From Octopus sinensis (lineage: Eukaryota): a stretch of DNA of 64,000 nucleotides. The stretch lies in assembly GCF_006345805.1 (NCBI RefSeq), contig NC_043005.1, forward strand, positions 52,452,001 through 52,516,000. Direction: 5' to 3'. Positions 2,888 through 62,339 of the stretch are shown here, piece by piece; position 1 is the first letter of the stretch; every line of letters begins with the position of its first letter. The translations under genes were made by a program, and so were the position numbers. The notes beneath the pieces were generated by a model that was not told the DNA's origin, ran no database searches, and saw only the letters and a list, made by a program, of their open reading frames with translations.

Positions 2888-2930
2888 CAGTTTATTTATT
2901 ATGAAAAGATTAAAAATTATGTTAAACCTA

Positions 2931-3370
2931 GGCGTAGGAGAGGCTGTGTGGTAAGTAGCTTGCTTACCAACCACATGGTTCCGGGTTCAGTACCCACTGG
3001 TGGCACCTTAGGGAAACAAGTGCTATATACTATAGCCGGGATGACCAAAGATCACTGTGCGAGTAGATTTGGTAGACGGAAACTGAAAGTAGCCCATCGA
3101 TATATGCATATATATATATATATATATATATATACATTCAGGCCTGCTGATGATTACGTAAGTATGAAATCACTGTGATACAGGCCTATATATTTTTAAA
3201 TGTCTTACTTTGAAAAATTGCATTCGGTGGGATTAGTAATATTTTGGTAGAAATGACTGATTGTCCCTCTTAGCGTTTGGCAGGTATATATATGCTCCTG
3301 GCATGTATGTATAATTATGCCCTCTATATATAAATTAATATATATAGATATATATATATATATATATATA

Positions 3371-3410
<40 letters not shown>

Positions 3411-3620
3411 TGTGTCTGTGTTTGTCTCCCCAGCATCGCTTGACAACCGATGGTGCTGTGTTTACGTCGTCGTAACTTAGCGGTTCGGCAAAAGAGACCG
3501 ATAGAATAAGTACTAGGCTTACAAAGAATAAGTCATGGGGTCGATTTGCTCGACTAAAGGCGGTGCACCAGCATGGCCGCAGTCAAATGACTGAAACAAG
3601 TAAAAGAGTATAAGAGTAAA
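2931..3620 (+). mobile_element. tRNA-derived SINE, family A, with a ~190 bp insert in its internal (TA)n/(TG)n tract
   Basis: The head (GGCGTAGGAG...GGTTCAG...GGAAACTGAAAG) and tail (GCTTGACAACCGATG...CAGTCAAATGACTGAAACAAGTAAAAGAG) match the uninterrupted copies at 3845-4263 and 47757-48187. Confidence 0.9.
3140..3187 (+). ncRNA. Type I hammerhead ribozyme motif
   Basis: AGGCCTG-CTGATGA-TTAC GTAA GTAT-GAAA-TCAC T GTGA-TA^CAGGCCT. Full core (CUGAUGA, GAA, A15.1-U16.1, H17=A), 7-bp stem I, 3-bp stem II with GNRA loop, 4-bp stem III. Position 10.1-11.1 is U-U instead of G-C. Confidence 0.8.
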
Positions 3621-3844
3621 AATAGTAACCTAAAATATCAAACCTAAAATATTATATAAACCTAAAATATTTCATGTCTAAGAGATCAATAATTTGTCAA
3701 ATAGATGGTATATTGGTTATCAATGATGAAGGGCTAATTTTGTGATCAGATAAATCAATCAACGCATAGGAACAATTTGTTTCTTCCTTGTCTCAAAATA
3801 CAAACGACACTCACTTTCCAACCGAACGTACGCCTTCACTGTCT

Positions 3845-4066
3845 CTACTCTCTTTACTCTTTTACTCTTTTACTTGTTTCAGTCATTTGACTGCGGCCAT
3901 GCTGGAGCACCGCCTTTAATCGAGCAACTCGAACCCGGGACTTATTCTTTGTAAGCCCAGTACTTATTCTATCGGTCTCTTTTGCCGAACCGCTAAGTGA
4001 CGGGGACATAAACACACCAGCATCGGTTGTCAAGCAATGCTAGGGGGGACAAACACAGACACACAA

Positions 4067-4099
<33 letters not shown>

Positions 4100-4263
4100 C
4101 GTCGGGCTTCTTTCAGTTTCCGTCTACCAAATCCACTCACAAGGTTTTGGTCGGCCCGAGGCTATAGCAGAAGACACTTGCCCAAGGTGCCGCGCAGTGG
4201 GACTGAACCCGGAACCATGTGGTTGGTAAACAAGCTACTTACCACACAGCCACTCCTGCGCCT
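3845..4263 (-). mobile_element. Full-length SINE family A
   Basis: A/B-box head, ACCTTGGGCAAGT CORE-like segment, internal (TA)n(TG)n, tail ending in (TAAAAGAG)n. Confidence 0.92.
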
Positions 4264-4715
4264 AAAATACTCGCATTAGATACAAGTAAAAGGATTCTTC
4301 AAAATAAAGCTCTCAAAAGTAAAGACAGGAAATGTGTATGAAAGCAGTTTTGAGGCAGAACCTATGGTTCACAAGTATTCCAATCTTCTTGTTCATGCTT
4401 GTCACAGGATATTTAACTACGGATATTTGGAGAGCGACACTCGTGTCGTACTTCATTATAATTCACAGAGATACATATGTCTCATTAATGAGAAGGCTAT
4501 TATCTGACGAGATGTAGCAGTACACACACACAAATATGTGTGTGTACGTACTGCTGTATGTATACAAATATCTATGTATGTGTATATATATATATACATG
4601 TATGTATATATATGAATATATATATGTATCTATATACGTACGTATATATATATATATATATATGTATGTATTTATGTATGTATGTATGTATGTATGTATG
4701 TGTATGTATGTGTAT

Positions 4716-8596: not shown

Positions 8597-8630
<34 letters not shown>

Positions 8631-9270
8631 ATGTATGTATGTATGTATATGTATGTATATATATATATGTATGTATATGTATGTATATATATATATATAT
8701 ATGTATGTATATGTATGTATATATATATATATATGTATATGTATGTATATATATATATGTATGTATATGTATATATATATATATGTATGTATATGTATGT
8801 ATATATATATGTATGTATATGTATGTATATATATATATATGTATGTATATGTATGTATATATATATATATGTATGTATATGTATGTATATATATATATAT
8901 GTATGAATATGTATGTATATATATATATATATATATGTATGTATATGTATGTATATATATGTATGTATATGTATATATAAATATGTATGCATATGTATGT
9001 ATATATGTATGAATATGTATATATATATGTATGTATATGTATATGTATGTATATATGTATGTATATATATATATGTATATATATGTATGTATATGTATGT
9101 ATATATATGTATATGTATTATATGTATGTATATGTATATATATATATATGTATATATATGTGTGTGTATATATAATATACATACATATTTATATATACAT
9201 ATATACACATATATATATTATATATATATTATATATATATATATATACATATATTTACACACACACATAT

Positions 9271-9317
<47 letters not shown>

Positions 9318-9370
9318 ATATACACATACATGCATATACACATGCGGATATCTTTACGTACATACACATA
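6400..9370. repeat. Large compound microsatellite field (TA, CA, TATG, CAA)
   Basis: Directly visible. Accounts for all the Y/I/H/T/C/V-rich ORFs here. Confidence 0.97.
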
Positions 9371-21044: not shown

Positions 21045-21126
<82 letters not shown>

Positions 21127-21189
21127 TACATATATAAATATATATATATATATACACATATATACATATATAAATATATATATATATGC

Positions 21190-21221
<32 letters not shown>

Positions 21222-24400: not shown

Positions 24401-25444
24401 CCTTCAGCCATGTCGAAATGTGCTTGTGACACAGTCCTAAATATGAATGCAGCTCTGCACTATAGCATACTAAAATTATGTCTTGTTTTTTTAGTGACGT
24501 AGATGGCCCTGAAAATATCTGCATGGATAAAATATTGAACTATTTACGTTTCACTGAATATCTCAGCTGAAGCATTTAACTTAGGGTCAAGGTAAGCTTT
24601 AATCTCGCGATACAGGAGTCATAAATTATCAGATGACAAAAGTTTTGGTGCTAAGAGGATTTTTCTTATGGATAACTGGTTTTAATTTTGAGTAGTTTTA
24701 AATTTAAGAATTAATACTTTCGAGATACACATTTTTGTTCCATAGCTCTATGTTTTATTTAAATAAATCCTACATTTGAAACACAGAATAGAAAAGTGTT
24801 AACGAATTGATCAAATGCGCTTTTGATTTATGTAAAGGTAAATTCTTTCAAATCTCTTTACATTTTGAATGATAACCAAATAATTTAAAAAATTATTTTC
24901 ATTCGCCACAACTCTTTTCACTGAATGGATTGGCGATAAAATAGGCTCGGTGCCAAAACAGCCGCGTGAAATGGCTGGCGACGGTGACCCGTTATTCATA
25001 TTGCTGTATATCCACCTAAAACTTCTCGATATATGACAGAAGACGTTACCAGAGAATTATTAGTATCTCATCTAGGGTTAAGGAGAAATTTCTTTAATTT
25101 GAGTAACTTAACTACAAAAGAGCTTTGTGACTGAATTGAAGAAATTTATGAATCATGAAAAACATAGAAAAACCAACAAAAGACATATTCTAGATCGTAT
25201 TGTGACAGCACGTGTCAAGCATTCGTATTCTTGGCAAACTATGAATTTTGGCGAAAGCAGTTTTTTATTGACAAAGAAAACTTTAATTTACTAAAAGTAA
25301 ATATAGTTTCAAGTTATTTTTTCTAATTTTTATCCCCCTTTAGTAGCATAAGGACCCACTCCGCAAGTGATGTTGTGAATCGATGTTTTAGTATGATATT
25401 CAACATTCATTGCTGCACATATAGTGCTGGTGTTCACTACACTG

Positions 25445-25658
25445 GGTGCCGGGTATTGAAATTAAACCTTACGCGTCTTTGCATAGACCCTACGGAAATT
25501 TTAACGAGTTCTGCTGATTAATTGGCCTACCATTAAAGAGGTGCTACGCTAGGTGTCGGGTATTGAAATTAAACCTTACGCGTCTTTGCATAGACCCTAC
25601 GGAAACTTTAACGAGTTCTGCTGATTAATTGACCTGCCATTAAAGAGGTGCTACGCTA
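25445..25658. repeat. Tandem dimer of a 107-bp unit
   Basis: 25445-25551 and 25552-25658 differ by 4 substitutions and no indels. Confidence 0.95.
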
Positions 25659-30297: not shown

Positions 30298-30365
<68 letters not shown>

Positions 30366-30377
30366 GTGTATATATAT

Positions 30378-30444
<67 letters not shown>

Positions 30445-31574
30445 CATATATACATATATGAGTATAGAGGCGCACACACATTTAATTGTCACAGTTTGCC
30501 ACTTAAAATGTACTCTATACACGGTGTAGAGTATATTATTCATATAACTATATGTAGTAAGTATATATTTATGTGTGTACATACATATACACATACATAC
30601 ATATATGCATATAAATATGCATACCTATACATACGACCACACATGTATATACAAACACACATATACACACATATACCCACGCATTAAGATGCTAGTGTGT
30701 CGATGTACGAGGAAGAAAATATTCAATAATGGTACATAGTATATTCCTTGTATATGTATGAACATAGTAAGTATATGCATATATATGTCTGTGTGTGCGT
30801 ATACATGTACGATATATATATATATACATTCCTGTACAAGCACATATATACAATATATATATATATATATATATATACATAACACATACACACACATATA
30901 TTATGTATATGCGTGTGTATGTATGTACGTATGTATTTAATACAGCCAGTAATGTCAGCGTGGTTGGCAAAGAAAAGAGGAAAGCAATAAGAGATGTGTG
31001 AGTTGGATGGGACTGATAATGGCATCATCGATATTTACGTCTGTATCAATATCTAAGTAGACTTTGATTAACCATTGATTTATTCCCTTACTCTCATAGT
31101 ATTTCTTATCTCATCTATTTTTTTTTTCGTCGTCAAATAGATTGACTTTAGTAAAGATTTTCAAGACCCTATGCATGTACACCGTTTTACTAAAGGATTT
31201 CTTTTCTTTTTTTTTTACTCCGTATTTATAGAGGAAATTTTTATTTTCTGTTTTGTTTTTACAATACGTTCGATTCTTGGTACTAAATCTGCATTATTCA
31301 CATACATCTTTGTTAATGCTATTATCGTCTCACAAATATTTGTTCGATATCCCGCATGAAACAGATGTATTTCTAGTTCTGACGCAGTGATCGACCATCA
31401 TAACTTGTCGTCTGGTATCTAGATTTTCCTACTAAACTAACCGCTGTTACTGAACCTCTTAAATGTACTTGAACGGCATAGCTTTTCACGTTCTGTTATC
31501 ATTTGTTTCTAACAAGCATTAATTTTTCTTTTTAGTCTATCTCTTCGACATGACTTTATATCTGTATGTACATA

Positions 31575-32629: not shown

Positions 32630-32916
32630 TTTTATTTGTTTCAGTCATTTGACTGTGGCCATGCTGGAGCATCGCCTTTAGTCGAGTAAATCGACTCCAG
32701 GGCTTATTCTTTGTAAGCCTAGTACTTATTCTATCAGTTTCTTTTGCCGAACCGCTAAGTTACGGGGATAAACACACCAGCATCGGTTGTCAAGCGATGT
32801 TGGGGGGACAAACATAGACACACAATCATATACACACATACATTATATATATATATATATTATATATATATATATTATATATAATATATATATATATAAT
32901 ATATATATATATTATA

Positions 32917-32990
<74 letters not shown>

Positions 32991-33083
32991 TATATACGAC
33001 GTGCTTCTTTTCCGTCTACCTAATCCACTCACAAGGCTTTGGTTGGTAAGCAGGCTACTTACCATACAGCCACTCCTACGCCT
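32630..33083 (-). mobile_element. SINE family A with an internal deletion
   Basis: Tail and head are present. The segment between AAGGCTTTGGT and TGGTAAGC that other copies carry is missing. Confidence 0.85.
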
Positions 33084-38404: not shown

Positions 38405-39292
38405 TATAATGTATACATATATATCTGTGGTGATATATCAGATATGTATGCATGCATCTATATACCTAGCATACGTCTATAGCATATGTGTGTGTATATA
38501 TACATAATACATATACATATATCTATATGTATATAATATATATAATATTATACTATATATATATATTATATATATATATATATATGTTATATGTATATAT
38601 ATATATATATGTGTGTGTGGGTTGATATATACACATGTATCTTCTCTCGTACATTCCTATACACACACCCTTACACACGCATACAGAAACAAAATCAATA
38701 CATTATACGAACACATAATCCTCCATACAGATACATACACTCACGCGTACACACATACAAGAAACAAAACGATTATTTAGCTGCAATAAGGCTTTAAGAA
38801 TGAAATGCGTTTCGGTGTTAAATTGCAAAAATGGTGGTTGTGGCGATACTATTGGAAGTGGTATTGATTTTGTTAAGAGGCGATGTATTCTAGCGTTTTA
38901 TTCATCAGACACCTAAGTCGATAAAACACCGTTAGATTGATTAACTACGTCTGATGGTTTAGAACACCGTCACTCTTTTGTTACGCTTTGTTTGTGTATG
39001 TTGCCGTATATTGTTTTTATTAGCGTGTTTCCTTATTTTCTTTTGTTTATAAAAGTTTTATTGATTTATACATATACATACATACATACTTACATACATA
39101 CATACATATATATATATATATATGCATATATTTATATATATATATATAATATATATATACATATATATATATATATCATATATATATGTGTGTGTATATA
39201 TCAGATATGTATGCATGCATCTATATACATATGCATACGTCTATATGCATATGTGTGTGTATATATACATATATACATATACTATATCTATG

Positions 39293-39340
<48 letters not shown>
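37850..39340. repeat. ~765-bp tandem duplication (possibly an assembly artefact)
   Basis: ~37850-38560 vs ~38615-39340. The differences are almost all 1-bp indels. Confidence 0.9.
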
Positions 39341-39345
<5 letters not shown>

Positions 39346-39469
39346 TATTATATGTATGTATGTATATATATATATATATGTCTACGTATATGTCTACACA
39401 CAAACGCAGGCGGACACATAAATACACTTTGTTTTCTCTATTTATCTTTGCTGCTCTTGTTTTCATTTA

Positions 39470-47329: not shown

Positions 47330-47406
<77 letters not shown>

Positions 47407-47541
47407 GTGTATGAATATATATATGTATATATATATATTCATGTATATATATGTATATACTATATAATATATATATGTATATTAGATGTAGTGTATGTAT
47501 ATTAGAGACATATGTATGTAGATATATATATATCTATATAG

Positions 47542-47576
<35 letters not shown>

Positions 47577-47720
47577 ATTATATATGCATATCTATCTATC
47601 ACGCTATCTATCATCTATCTATCCATCTATCTCTCTTCTTCTCTCTCTCTCTCTATATATATATTTATATATATATATTATATATAAATATATATATATA
47701 TATATATCTTTCTCTCTGTC

Positions 47721-47756
<36 letters not shown>

Positions 47757-60257: not shown

Positions 60258-60648
60258 CCCAGCATATCAATTCAAGCTGTCACATTTGTTTTAAGTTAAA
60301 TAAACAGATATTGCAACACATTAAAGCCTAATTAATCACATCAGCATTACATCACAGGATACGCTGACAAATTGCATGCGCAATTCCATACCAAGCTTCC
60401 ATAAGGCTGATAAGTGTCGTCGAGCGTAAACGAGTTGTACTTATGTAATATTCATTATTCAAAGAACGATATTACGCTTATACATAGATAGATCGTTACG
60501 ATATTGATATCGTCTGAATCTTATCAAATATTTGTACATATCGAGATGTATTGCATCAATCTGCCTGTCTCTTTGTACACATATGTATGTATGTATGTAT
60601 ATAGAAAGCGACACTAACTCCCATAGACTTGCATATATATATATACAT

Positions 60649-60683
<35 letters not shown>

Positions 60684-60867
60684 GCGTGTGTGTGTATATA
60701 TGTATATATATATTTGCATATATATATATATGCATGCATATGTACATATATATATGTGTGTGTGTTTGTGTATATATTTGTGTGTAATATATATATTATT
60801 TTAGTTGTTTGTATACTGTACATGTTTTATATATATATATTTAGAATACACACACACACACACACAT

Positions 60868-60898
<31 letters not shown>

Positions 60899-60985
60899 CA
60901 ACTTTACATATAAATATATAAAGACATTTCCACCTATATAAGTATATGGCTATAATATACATAATATATATGTATAAAATATACG

Positions 60986-61017
<32 letters not shown>

Positions 61018-61837
61018 ATAATATAAATATATATAATATATATATATATATACACATATATATATATATACACTATACAATAACACATCTTTCTACTTAG
61101 GTTTTATATATGTATATATATATATATATATATATGGATATGTGCGTGTGTGTATGTATGAATGTATGCATACATATATAGATATAGATTTATGACAGTA
61201 AAATGGAAAAAGGGGGGAAATGTGTATGCCCATGCATCTATGCTCTATAATTCTATAGGTTTATGTTAATGCTTGCGTATGTGTATGCATTTTCTCTGTT
61301 CTCTTGAAGGTCTTCATGATAAGCTCTTTCCAATATTGATCTAACGTAAGAGATTTCATCTGTATGAAAAATATTACATATTTTTCCCGTCAATGGTTAG
61401 ATCTAGTCTCAAGGTATTGACTGATAAACGAAACTAATACACCACACATCGAGATGCTATCAGCATCATTCGTATATATTCGTACATAGATCTTTGCATA
61501 CATACTTGAAAAATACACACACATATATATACATACACACATATATATATATATATATATATACATACATATATATACATATATGTTTACACACACATAT
61601 ATATATATGTATACATATATACATACATCTATATGTGTATATATAGAGATATATATATAAACATATTATACAAATACAGATACACACACATGCATACACA
61701 CACACACATATATATATATATGTACAAATTTATATACATATATATACGCATAGATATGTATAGATCCTATATTTATGTGTGTATGTATATGTATATTGTA
61801 CATATGCATATACATACTACATATATATATATGTGTG

Positions 61838-61879
<42 letters not shown>

Positions 61880-61880
61880 T

Positions 61881-61912
<32 letters not shown>

Positions 61913-62339
61913 GGTGTGTATATACACATATATATATTACGTATATGTATATATATATATATATATGCACTTATATAAAATATAATATGCATATATATTA
62001 TATATATATATATATTTATATATGTACATAAACACGCGCGTGCGCATACACACATGTATATGCTGAAGACACACGTCTTCCAAAGTGGTCTTCTCTATTG
62101 CAGTACTGATGTTATTAGTGAAACATGAAGATTAATTTTGATATACTGCTTTCATTGCTGTAGCGACGATCCATCTTTAGCGTTTCGTGGTATGGAAAGG
62201 CAAATCCACTCTTAGATCATATCTGTAATTCTTTGGCCTCACATAGAACTGGCAATTCTAACGTCACGTTCATTGATTGATCGCCTGATCTTTATCGACA
62301 TCCAAGTAATCGATGCAATCATCTTAATCGGCATCATCC

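What the first reader, a model, noticed from the sequence alone, without database searches (positions are those of the whole stretch)
3140..3187. Near-canonical type I hammerhead ribozyme with a palindromic stem III
Seen: AGGCCTG|CTGATGA|TTAC-GTAA-GTAT|GAAA|TCAC-T-GTGA|TA^CAGGCCT. All core bases are present. Stem I is 7 bp (3140-3146 with 3181-3187), stem II has a GNRA loop, and ATCACTGTGAT is a palindrome except for its central base. Predicted cleavage is after A3180 (AUA). Established: type I HHRs with palindromic stem III act as dimers in animal satellite/retrozyme repeats and Penelope-like elements. Inference: this is a ribozyme or a recent relic of one. The U-U at 10.1-11.1 (normally G-C) may weaken it.
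Basis: partly seen in the sequence, partly recalled or inferred. Interest (0 to 1): 0.88.

Follow-up and report, generated by a model that had tools for sequence, protein, structure and literature searches.

The report
Hammerhead ribozyme motif in octopus-like retrozyme
The 48-base motif is a complete hammerhead self-cleaving RNA motif that occurs once per unit in a young, roughly 2,250-copy family of small non-coding tandem retroelements, a known kind of animal element, and the window holds only a truncated solo copy with a weakened stem.

Summary
The motif is at 3140-3187 exactly as described. All core bases are present, helix I has 7 bp, helix II ends in a GUAA loop, and helix III is nearly palindromic. 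It is not an isolated oddity. Window 3132-3341 is a 5'-truncated piece (unit positions 1-213) of a ~484-nt non-coding repeat, inserted into the (TA)n tract of a SINE-like repeat.

The genome holds about 2,250 copies of the ribozyme core. They sit in tandem arrays of up to at least 13 units, probably over 30. The insertions match the published Penelope-like-element pattern:
- fixed 3' ends at two sites (~213 and ~335)
- variable 5' truncation
- an inverted partner arm
- (TA)n on both sides

Rfam does not call the motif (HH9 14.7 bits against a threshold of 52). The U.U at 10.1-11.1 is real, but about a third of sister copies carry A-U or G.U there, and one subfamily keeps helix I through a G.U pair. 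Two copies are predicted to fold into a double hammerhead. The circular unit is far more structured than shuffles (z = -6.6).

Verdict: a hammerhead of an animal (non-LTR) retrozyme, a new member of a known kind. Catalysis is untested, and the window copy alone is probably weak or inert.

The parts
3132..3341 (+). 5'-truncated solo copy (unit positions ~1-213, possibly starting a few bases earlier inside the TA tract) of a ~484-nt non-coding tandem retroelement (retrozyme-like)
   Evidence: blastn of the unit against the window: 3132-3341 = unit 1-213, 98.6% identity, and the only copy in the window. At least 48 scored genomic copies at 97-100% identity.
3140..3146 (+). helix I, 5' strand (AGGCCUG)
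   Evidence: pairs with 3181-3187; kept in the MFE and centroid folds
3147..3153 (+). hammerhead core box C3-A9 (CUGAUGA)
   Evidence: the only CUGANGA box in the unit, and on the + strand only
3154..3165 (+). helix II: U10.1.U11.1 mismatch, 3 bp (UAC/GUA), GUAA tetraloop
   Evidence: the HH9 model alignment places it the same way; 10.1 is A or G in ~720 sister copies
3166..3168 (+). core G12 A13 A14
3169..3179 (+). helix III near-palindrome AUCACUGUGAU (A15.1...U16.1): 4 bp plus a CUG loop in a monomer; 5 bp + U.U + 5 bp between two copies
3180..3181 (+). predicted cleavage site, between A17 (3180) and C1.1 (3181)
   Evidence: position relative to the core; not tested experimentally
3181..3187 (+). 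helix I, 3' strand (CAGGCCU); CAGGUCU (G.U) in the larger subfamily
3325..3341 (+). AU-rich 3' end of the insertion (TATATATAAATTAATAT), the commonest 3' junction of the family; inferred reverse-transcription start region
   Evidence: 34 of 57 arm 3' ends fall at unit 205-215 and always abut (TA)n
3100..3131 (.). (TA)n tract left of the insertion (target)
   Evidence: a paralogous repeat copy has one uninterrupted (TA)n here
3342..3371 (.). (TA)n tract right of the insertion (target)
2929..3627 (+). host SINE-like repeat interrupted by the insertion
   Evidence: aligns with the inverted copy at 3846-4264, which lacks the 3132-3341 insert. ARAGORN finds no tRNA gene. The 'SINE' label is from my memory of octopus SINEs.

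Best explanation
Window 3140-3187 is the hammerhead ribozyme motif (type I topology) of a young, high-copy family of non-autonomous tandem retroelements, an animal 'non-LTR retrozyme'. Each ~484-nt, AT-rich, ORF-less unit carries one motif on the strand that serves as the RNA intermediate.

Proposed cycle. The first two steps are inferred; the insertion anatomy in the third is shown, while the enzyme behind it is inferred.
1. Arrays are transcribed as multimers. Neighbouring motifs pair through the palindromic helix I and the near-palindromic helix III into a double hammerhead. Each cuts after A17 (AUA|C) and releases unit-length RNA.
2. The unit RNA is ligated by a host enzyme into a highly base-paired circle.
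3. A Penelope-like element's reverse transcriptase/GIY-YIG nuclease nicks both strands of a (TA)n tract. It starts cDNA synthesis at two internal AU-rich sites of the RNA (unit ~205-213 and ~326-335) and copies one to many units. This leaves 5'-truncated tandem arms, often as an inverted pair.

The window copy is one such insertion, 0.44 units long, in the (TA)n of a SINE-like repeat. It keeps a whole motif but has no partner copy and carries the U.U allele at 10.1-11.1. In place it is most likely a weak or inactive by-product rather than a working gene.
For: Motif and chance:
- All core bases and three helices are present.
- It is the only descriptor hit in the window.
- 0 of 1.1 Gb of random sequence reaches helix I >=7 bp.

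Family:
- 2,250 cores against 0 in the control.
- Arrays have 475-485-nt spacing and reach at least 13 units.
- The unit is 33% GC and has no ORF over 51 codons.

Retrotransposition signature:
- 3' ends are bimodal, 34 at unit 205-215 and 22 at 324-335. 5' ends are scattered over the unit.
- Both kinds of 3' end abut (TA)n.
- Every complete inverted pair examined has one arm of each 3'-end type.
- A paralogous repeat copy shows the empty (TA)n site.
- These features match published PLE features: 5' truncation, partial tandems, an inverted 5' copy, a tail and a microsatellite bias (PMC8557442); both strands cut and extended, two internal start sites, and the HHR just upstream of them (PMC11167929).

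Strand: the motif lies on the strand with the fixed 3' end. The G.U in subfamily B pairs only in this sense.

RNA structure:
- Cofolding two copies gives exactly the double hammerhead, -35.3 against 2 x -13.8 kcal/mol.
- The circular unit has MFE -126.7 kcal/mol and z = -6.6, with 0 of 200 shuffles as low.

Variation among amplified copies falls on helix positions and keeps or restores pairing:
- Pair 2.5-1.5 is G-C in 306 exact copies and G.U in 860.
- 10.1 is U, A or G opposite an invariant U11.1, with 722 non-U copies.
- The opposite strand of helix II shows only 25 sporadic variants.

Single-unit templates: 7 array-private substitutions are fixed in all units, 6 of them in both arms, with few intermediates.

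Precedent: the axolotl HHR_Amex2 has a U.U at the base of helix II and still cleaves, better as a dimer (PMC7229834). The genome also holds PLE nuclease frames, some intact, and canonical hammerheads.
Against: - No Rfam hammerhead model reaches its threshold. There was nothing at gathering score, nothing in a 141-nt E<=10 scan, and 14.7 bits against 52 for HH9 in a 57-nt scan.
- Helix II is only 3 AU-rich pairs next to a U.U in this allele.
- The monomer MFE (-13.0) prefers a rival pairing of U4-U7 with A15.1-A15.4 over the hammerhead fold (-11.0).
- No loop-loop tertiary motif could be recognised.
- There is no true double compensatory change. The A-U version of pair 2.5-1.5 has only 4 copies against 0 for A.C, and that split is not significant given that subfamily B is the larger.
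- Subfamilies A and B differ at ~3% of sites, and the 48-nt motif has 1 difference, so no measurable excess conservation is seen.
- No sequence similarity was found to 30 PLE loci, so the autonomous partner is unidentified.
- In the one PLE studied in vitro, hammerhead mutants still insert.
- One 13-unit array has a 5-unit higher-order pattern, so not all arrays come from a monomer circle.
- No RNA data are available.
Confidence: 0.62

Rival explanations
1. A relic or dispensable hammerhead. The motif descends from a working ribozyme (perhaps the G10.1 allele), but the U.U allele in the window no longer cleaves usefully. The family spreads from unprocessed multimeric transcripts, so the motif is carried along rather than used.
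For: The U.U allele is the commonest, about two thirds of cores, which suggests a weak helix II does not hinder spread. PLE hammerhead mutants still insert in vitro, and no reads end at the cut site in vivo for that element. Heterogeneous long arrays exist: L071 has a 5-unit pattern, and G and U units are mixed on C2:8.216-8.234 Mb. The Rfam score is low.
Against: The 35-nt core is otherwise invariant across subfamilies. All amplified changes are pairing-compatible. Array-private variants fixed in every unit and both arms point to single-unit templates. An axolotl ribozyme with U.U at the same place is active.
Confidence: 0.22
2. A chance resemblance. The three palindromes (CAGGCCTG, TTACGTAA, ATCACTGTGAT) are DNA-level features of the element, for example promoter or protein-binding sites, that happen to flank CTGATGA and GAAA.
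For: No covariance model reaches threshold. TTACGTAA resembles a bZIP-type palindromic site (my recollection, not tested). A few chance hits per genome are expected at this descriptor stringency, extrapolating.
Against: The expected chance rate is about 3e-7 per 484-nt unit strand, extrapolated. Yet the hit lies in exactly the kind of element where hammerheads are known, and on the sense strand. Subfamily B breaks the DNA palindrome but keeps an RNA G.U pair. The only strongly polymorphic core-adjacent site is 10.1, where the alternatives create pairs.
Confidence: 0.1
3. A DNA transposon or foldback element with long terminal inverted repeats; the motif would then be part of a TIR.
For: Many copies occur as inverted pairs 0.3-1.3 kb apart.
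Against: The arms are tandem multimers of one unit. Their inner ends are variable, and their outer ends are two different fixed sites (213 against 335), not identical termini. Single arms with 5' truncation are common. No transposase ORF is present. No target-site duplication could be assessed, because both ends lie in (TA)n.
Confidence: 0.02

Closest known systems
Animal non-LTR retrozymes (Cervera & de la Pena 2020, PMC7229834): short tandem repeats with type I hammerheads, expressed as circular RNAs (coral, mussel, axolotl)
   Same: One type I hammerhead per unit in AT-rich, non-coding tandem repeats. The unit RNA is predicted to be highly base-paired. Helix III is short and palindromic, suited to dimers. 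Autonomous PLEs carrying their own hammerheads coexist in the genome. The axolotl HHR_Amex2 even shares the U.U at the base of helix II.
   Different: The unit is longer (~484 nt against the reported 170-400 nt, or 150-450 bp). Circular RNA and cleavage are not shown here. The host appears to be a cephalopod, for which I found no published retrozyme. Helix I is a perfect 7-bp palindrome, and no recognisable loop 1-loop 2 contacts were found.
Penelope-like element pLTR hammerheads (Cervera & de la Pena 2014, PMC4209133; Frangieh 2024, PMC11167929)
   Same: The hammerhead lies shortly upstream of the internal reverse-transcription start sites. Insertions show 5' truncation, tandem and inverted arms, two alternative 3' ends (a 'tail') and AT-rich or microsatellite targets.
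   Different: There is no RT/GIY-YIG ORF and the period is 484 nt, so this is not an autonomous PLE. There is no blastn similarity to 30 PLE loci of the same genome. This genome's PLE-type hammerheads (GUAC CUGAAGAG ACCC...GGGUC GAAA CAUGUG UC) differ in sequence and score up to 48 bits with RF00163. The two 3' ends are ~122 nt apart rather than 30-40.
Newt satellite 2 and Schistosoma SM-alpha hammerheads (classical type I, dimer-active)
   Same: Type I topology, repeated-DNA context, and a weak single-copy fold with a stable double hammerhead.
   Different: The sequences are unrelated, and here helix III is longer (4 bp in a monomer). This comparison with those sequences is from general knowledge and was not tested here.

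Membership tests
Hammerhead ribozyme (Rfam clan CL00010; type I) | Conserved core: C3 U4 G5 A6 N7 G8 A9, G12 A13 A14, A15.1-U16.1, H17 not G | tested here: met
   Read directly at 3147-3153, 3166-3169, 3179-3180. Invariant in 71 of 82 sampled units; the rest differ only by 1-nt homopolymer deletions.
Hammerhead ribozyme (Rfam clan CL00010; type I) | Three helices around the core with helix I open (type I) | tested here: met
   Helix I 7 bp, helix II 3 bp plus a tetraloop, helix III 4 bp plus a triloop. The HH9 model alignment uses the same register.
Hammerhead ribozyme (Rfam clan CL00010; type I) | Base pair at 10.1-11.1 (normally G-C) | tested here: not met
   U.U in the window copy. A-U or G.U in 722 of ~2,250 sister copies; G-C was never seen among amplified variants.
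Hammerhead ribozyme (Rfam clan CL00010; type I) | Covariance-model score at or above Rfam's gathering threshold | tested here: not met
   No hit at gathering score. None at E<=10 in 141 nt. RF02275 gives 14.7 bits against 52 in a 57-nt scan. Family copies are absent from the 65 RF00163 genome hits.
Hammerhead ribozyme (Rfam clan CL00010; type I) | Covariation supporting the helices | tested here: inconclusive
   One-sided, pairing-preserving changes are amplified: G-C/G.U at 2.5-1.5, and U.U/A-U/G.U at 10.1-11.1. The double change A-U occurs in only 4 copies. The family is too young for more.
Hammerhead ribozyme (Rfam clan CL00010; type I) | Loop 1-loop 2 tertiary contacts | not testable with these tools
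   A possible internal loop and an AU closing helix lie beyond helix I in the context fold, but no contact can be scored.
Hammerhead ribozyme (Rfam clan CL00010; type I) | Site-specific self-cleavage | not testable with these tools
   Needs transcription assays or RNA-end mapping.
Animal non-LTR retrozyme | Short tandem DNA repeats, each unit carrying one type I hammerhead | tested here: met
   Arrays at 475-485-nt spacing, up to at least 13 units. One CUGANGA box per unit. The unit is slightly longer than the published 150-450 bp.
Animal non-LTR retrozyme | Non-coding and low GC (<45%) | tested here: met
   GC 33%. The longest stop-free stretch is 51 codons.
Animal non-LTR retrozyme | Unit RNA highly self-paired | tested here: met
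   Circular fold -126.7 kcal/mol, 63% paired, z = -6.6 against 200 dinucleotide shuffles. This is a prediction only.
Animal non-LTR retrozyme | Expressed as linear and circular unit-length RNA | not testable with these tools
   No transcriptome access. Indirect support: array-private variants are fixed in all units and both arms.
Animal non-LTR retrozyme | Coexists with autonomous PLEs that carry hammerheads | tested here: met
   4,846 first-look GIY-YIG candidates, including frames of 781-883 aa without stops. PLE-type hammerheads reach 48 bits.
Penelope-like element (autonomous) | ORF with reverse transcriptase and GIY-YIG nuclease | tested here: not met
   No ORF in the unit or its flanks. 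No similarity to 30 PLE loci.
Penelope-like element insertion signature (mobilisation in trans) | Fixed 3' end(s) with a 'tail', 5' truncation, partial tandems, an inverted 5'-truncated copy, and an AT-rich or microsatellite target | tested here: met
   compared with PMC8557442 and PMC11167929.

The most novel reading that the evidence does not exclude
This family may be a natural experiment on hammerhead tuning and on how retrozymes move. Three amplified alleles at the single position 10.1 (U.U, A-U, G.U opposite a fixed U11.1) would set different cleavage/ligation balances and so different copy-number success. The insertion anatomy, with twin arms that each start at a different fixed RNA site in (TA)n and array-private variants fixed in every unit, would be direct genomic evidence. 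It would show that a Penelope-like enzyme copies a monomeric circular RNA by rolling-circle reverse transcription from both nicked strands.
Probability: 0.3. Interest if true: 0.65.

Novelty: new member of a known kind. Interest (0 to 1): 0.45.

Why it matters
Hammerheads in animal tandem repeats and their link to Penelope-like elements are known, but the mobilisation step is still mostly inferred. This family is very young and has about 2,250 units. Its junctions are clean: two fixed 3' ends, (TA)n targets, and paired inverted arms. It also carries a three-allele series at the one position where the motif departs from the consensus. That makes it a convenient system for testing three things: whether cleavage strength matters for spread, whether circles are the templates, and which Penelope-like element supplies the enzyme. 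For annotation, it shows that Rfam thresholds miss this ribozyme family entirely.

Tried and rejected
- **Rfam scans.** The gathering-score scan of the window gave nothing. A 141-nt permissive scan gave only microsatellite-driven miRNA noise.
- **DNA transposon with long TIRs.** This was suggested by the inverted pairs. I rejected it once the arms proved to be tandem multimers with different outer ends.
- **Coding partner next to copies.** None was found.
- **Similarity of the unit to other loci.** There was no similarity to canonical hammerhead loci or to 30 PLE loci.
- **Covariation within the family.** The first 185 sampled units were invariant in the core.
- **Compensation test at pair 2.5-1.5.** It gave 4 A-U copies against 0 A.C, too few to count.
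- **Excess conservation of the motif between subfamilies A and B.** There was no power: 1 difference seen against ~1.5 expected.
- **Enrichment of arm 5' ends at the cleavage site.** None at position 50. There is only a small post-hoc cluster at 56-67.
- **tRNA-like head of the host repeat.** ARAGORN found none.
- **Tool limits.** One genome search failed but was still counted, so helix III variants could not be surveyed.
- **Pfam on window ORFs.** Only sub-threshold hits inside microsatellites.

Full report
**Observation**

- Every conserved hammerhead position is present: C3-A9, G12-A14, A15.1/U16.1 and A17.
- Helix I is seven Watson-Crick pairs.
- Helix II is U.U plus three pairs, closed by a GUAA loop.
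- ATCACTGTGAT is a palindrome apart from its centre.

One detail needs correcting. Within one molecule helix III can be only 4 bp with a CUG loop. The full 11-nt pairing needs two copies.

**Is it more than chance?**

I wrote a relaxed descriptor: exact core, helix II >=3 bp with a 10.1-11.1 mismatch allowed, and helix III >=3 bp.
- It finds this hit and nothing else on either strand of the window, even when loosened further.
- In 1.1 Gb of random sequence with the window's composition it found 27 hits with helix I >=4 bp, 9 with >=5, 2 with >=6 and none with >=7.
- By extrapolation, that is roughly 1e-4 expected per 64-kb window and a few per whole genome.

So chance cannot be excluded on numbers alone for a 2.7-Gb genome, and the context has to decide.

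**Covariance models**

Rfam gave nothing at gathering thresholds. A permissive scan of 141 nt showed no hammerhead either.

Searching the whole genome with RF00163 finds other hammerheads that are canonical (up to 48 bits). Their form is GUAC-CUGAAGAG-ACCC..GGGUC-GAAA-CAUGUG-UC, and some are 431 nt apart in tandem. They share no sequence with the element described here. By Rfam's criterion the motif is therefore not a called member.

**What the motif sits in**

Window 3130-3335 matches dozens of places in the genome at 97-100% identity. The genome is 2.72 Gb in 13,516 contigs, and its repeats look like an octopus's to me, from memory. Mapping the copies shows a unit of about 484 nt repeated head to tail.
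- The 35-nt ribozyme core occurs 2,250 times, against 0 for the reversed control.
- Spacing is 475-485 nt, and arrays reach at least 13 units.
- The unit is 33% GC, has no open frame over 51 codons, and holds one CUGANGA box, on one strand only.
- The window holds a single partial copy, 3132-3341 = unit 1-213.
- This copy lies inside the (TA)n tract of a SINE-like repeat. An inverted paralogue at 3846-4264 has that tract uninterrupted.

**How copies were inserted**

- Among 57 arm ends, 34 stop at unit 205-215 (TATATATAAAT(TAATAT) followed by (TA)n). Another 22 stop at 324-335 (GCAAAAT(TTTTAT) followed by (TA)n).
- 5' ends are spread over the whole unit.
- About half of the insertions are inverted pairs of arms. 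In every complete pair seen, one arm ends at ~213 and the other at ~335, with both 3' ends pointing outward.

This matches what is published for Penelope-like elements:
- strong 5' truncation, partial tandems, an adjacent inverted 5'-truncated copy, a 'tail' at one end and a bias for microsatellites (PMC8557442)
- an enzyme that cuts and extends both DNA strands at AT-rich sites and starts reverse transcription at two internal RNA sites just downstream of the hammerhead (PMC11167929)

The genome has thousands of GIY-YIG candidates, several with uninterrupted frames of 781-883 aa. Thirty of those loci share no sequence with the unit, so the helper element is not identified. The hammerhead lies on the strand whose 3' end is fixed, which is the RNA sense strand.

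**RNA-level support**

- The hammerhead fold of the 48-mer (-11.0 kcal/mol) is 2 kcal/mol above an alternative that pairs U4-U7 with A15.1-A15.4.
- Two copies cofold into exactly the double hammerhead. It has intermolecular helix I, 5+5 bp of helix III around a U.U, the helix II hairpins and open cores, at -35.3 against 2 x -13.8 kcal/mol.
- That is the architecture described for animal type I hammerheads, which work as dimers in tandem repeats (PMC4209133).
- The circularised unit folds to -126.7 kcal/mol, 6.6 standard deviations below dinucleotide shuffles, as reported for retrozyme circles (PMC7229834).

**Variation**

The family is very young. Most differences are single-copy, and many are 1-nt homopolymer deletions that look like assembly errors. 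Two changes within the motif are amplified to hundreds of copies.
1. Helix I pair 2.5-1.5 is G-C in the window's subfamily (306 exact 48-mers) and G.U in the larger subfamily (860). This breaks the DNA palindrome but keeps the RNA pair, and only in this sense. The A-U form has 4 copies and the A.C form none, which is too few to weigh.
2. Position 10.1, the one place where the motif departs from the consensus, is U in about two thirds of copies. It is A or G in 722 copies, giving A-U or G.U with U11.1. The listed sample has 55 A to 30 G.

The four bases of the opposite strand of helix II show only 25 sporadic variants. No amplified change touches a core base among the positions I could survey. 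Between subfamilies A and B the unit differs at about 3% of sites and the motif at one site, so there is no measurable excess conservation.

**Template**

Seven substitutions are private to one insertion yet present in all of its units, and six of them occur in both arms. Only nine are intermediate, and over a hundred are singletons. That is what copying round a single unit-length template would give. There are exceptions:
- One 13-unit array has a 5-unit higher-order pattern.
- A long array on contig 2 (8.216-8.234 Mb, probably over 30 units by its span) mixes G and U units.

So multimeric templates or later rearrangement also occur.

**Interpretation**

The best reading is a hammerhead of an animal non-LTR retrozyme, mobilised in trans by a Penelope-like element into (TA)n. 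The window copy is a truncated by-product. A U.U at the base of helix II has a precedent in the axolotl HHR_Amex2, which cleaves weakly alone and well as a dimer.

- **Shown:** the motif, the family, the insertion anatomy, the allele series and the predicted folds.
- **Inferred:** cleavage, circularisation, rolling-circle copying and the identity of the enzyme.

The main rival is that the motif is a dispensable relic in the U allele. PLE hammerhead mutants still insert in vitro. A pure chance resemblance and a DNA-transposon reading are unlikely, for the reasons given under the rival explanations.

**Novelty**

Hammerhead-bearing tandem retroelements are known from cnidarians, mussels, amphibians and many invertebrates. 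I found no paper describing one in cephalopods in the searchable library. This is a new member of a known kind. It has a useful allele series and unusually legible insertion junctions.

Noticed in passing
window 8600-9322, 21070-21221, 30300-30459, 32844-32996, 39067-39379, 47335-47756, 60633-61135, 61523-62023: The window is dense in long (TA)n tracts, the target of this element family, yet only the short tract at 3100-3371 is occupied. The long stop-free frames in the window are artefacts of these tracts.
   Followed up: partly
window 2929-3627 and 3846-4264: Two inverted copies of a SINE-like repeat. They include a 200-nt stretch that is 91% complementary, with 218 nt between the arms. ARAGORN finds no tRNA-like gene in them.
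   Followed up: partly
L036/L037 (G000:C16:25146363-25146839) and other RF00163 hits: The genome has a separate, canonical hammerhead family (GUAC CUGAAGAG ACCC..GGGUC GAAA CAUGUG UC). It scores up to 48 bits, and some copies are 431 nt apart in tandem, so a second retrozyme or PLE pLTR family is likely.
   Followed up: partly
L071 (G000:C1:143652000-143660500): A 13-unit array whose units alternate between two haplotypes in a 5-unit higher-order pattern (Y Y* Y X X repeated). This suggests a multimeric template or later segmental duplication.
   Followed up: partly
G000:C2:8216500-8233520: One array spanning about 17 kb, probably over 30 units, mixes units with G at 10.1 and units with U at 10.1.
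   Followed up: no
unit positions 56-67 (equivalent to window 3187-3198): Six of about 51 informative arm 5' ends fall just 3' of helix I. This could reflect reverse transcriptase stalling at the folded ribozyme. The cluster was noticed post hoc and is not significant after correction.
   Followed up: partly
G000 loci (e.g. C6:12733272, C1:207477583, C3:65736423, C19:35627265): Several GIY-YIG matches sit in identical-scoring uninterrupted frames of 781 aa. This suggests a recently active Penelope-like family that could be the helper. Those particular copies were never fetched: only the 30 best-scoring GIY-YIG loci were compared with the unit (no similarity), and those include just one 780-aa and one 883-aa frame.
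   Followed up: partly
window 3154-3161 and 3139-3146: TTACGTAA and CAGGCCTG are perfect 8-nt DNA palindromes inside the motif. The first resembles a bZIP-type binding site (my recollection). I considered this as a rival reading but did not test it.
   Followed up: no
window 25437-25658: A 107-nt unit repeated 2.1 times at 94% identity, unrelated to the finding.
   Followed up: no
L001-L030, L071-L082: Many copies differ from the consensus only by 1-nt deletions in GG, CC or AA runs. This looks like long-read assembly error rather than mutation, so true copy identity is probably above 99%.
   Followed up: no
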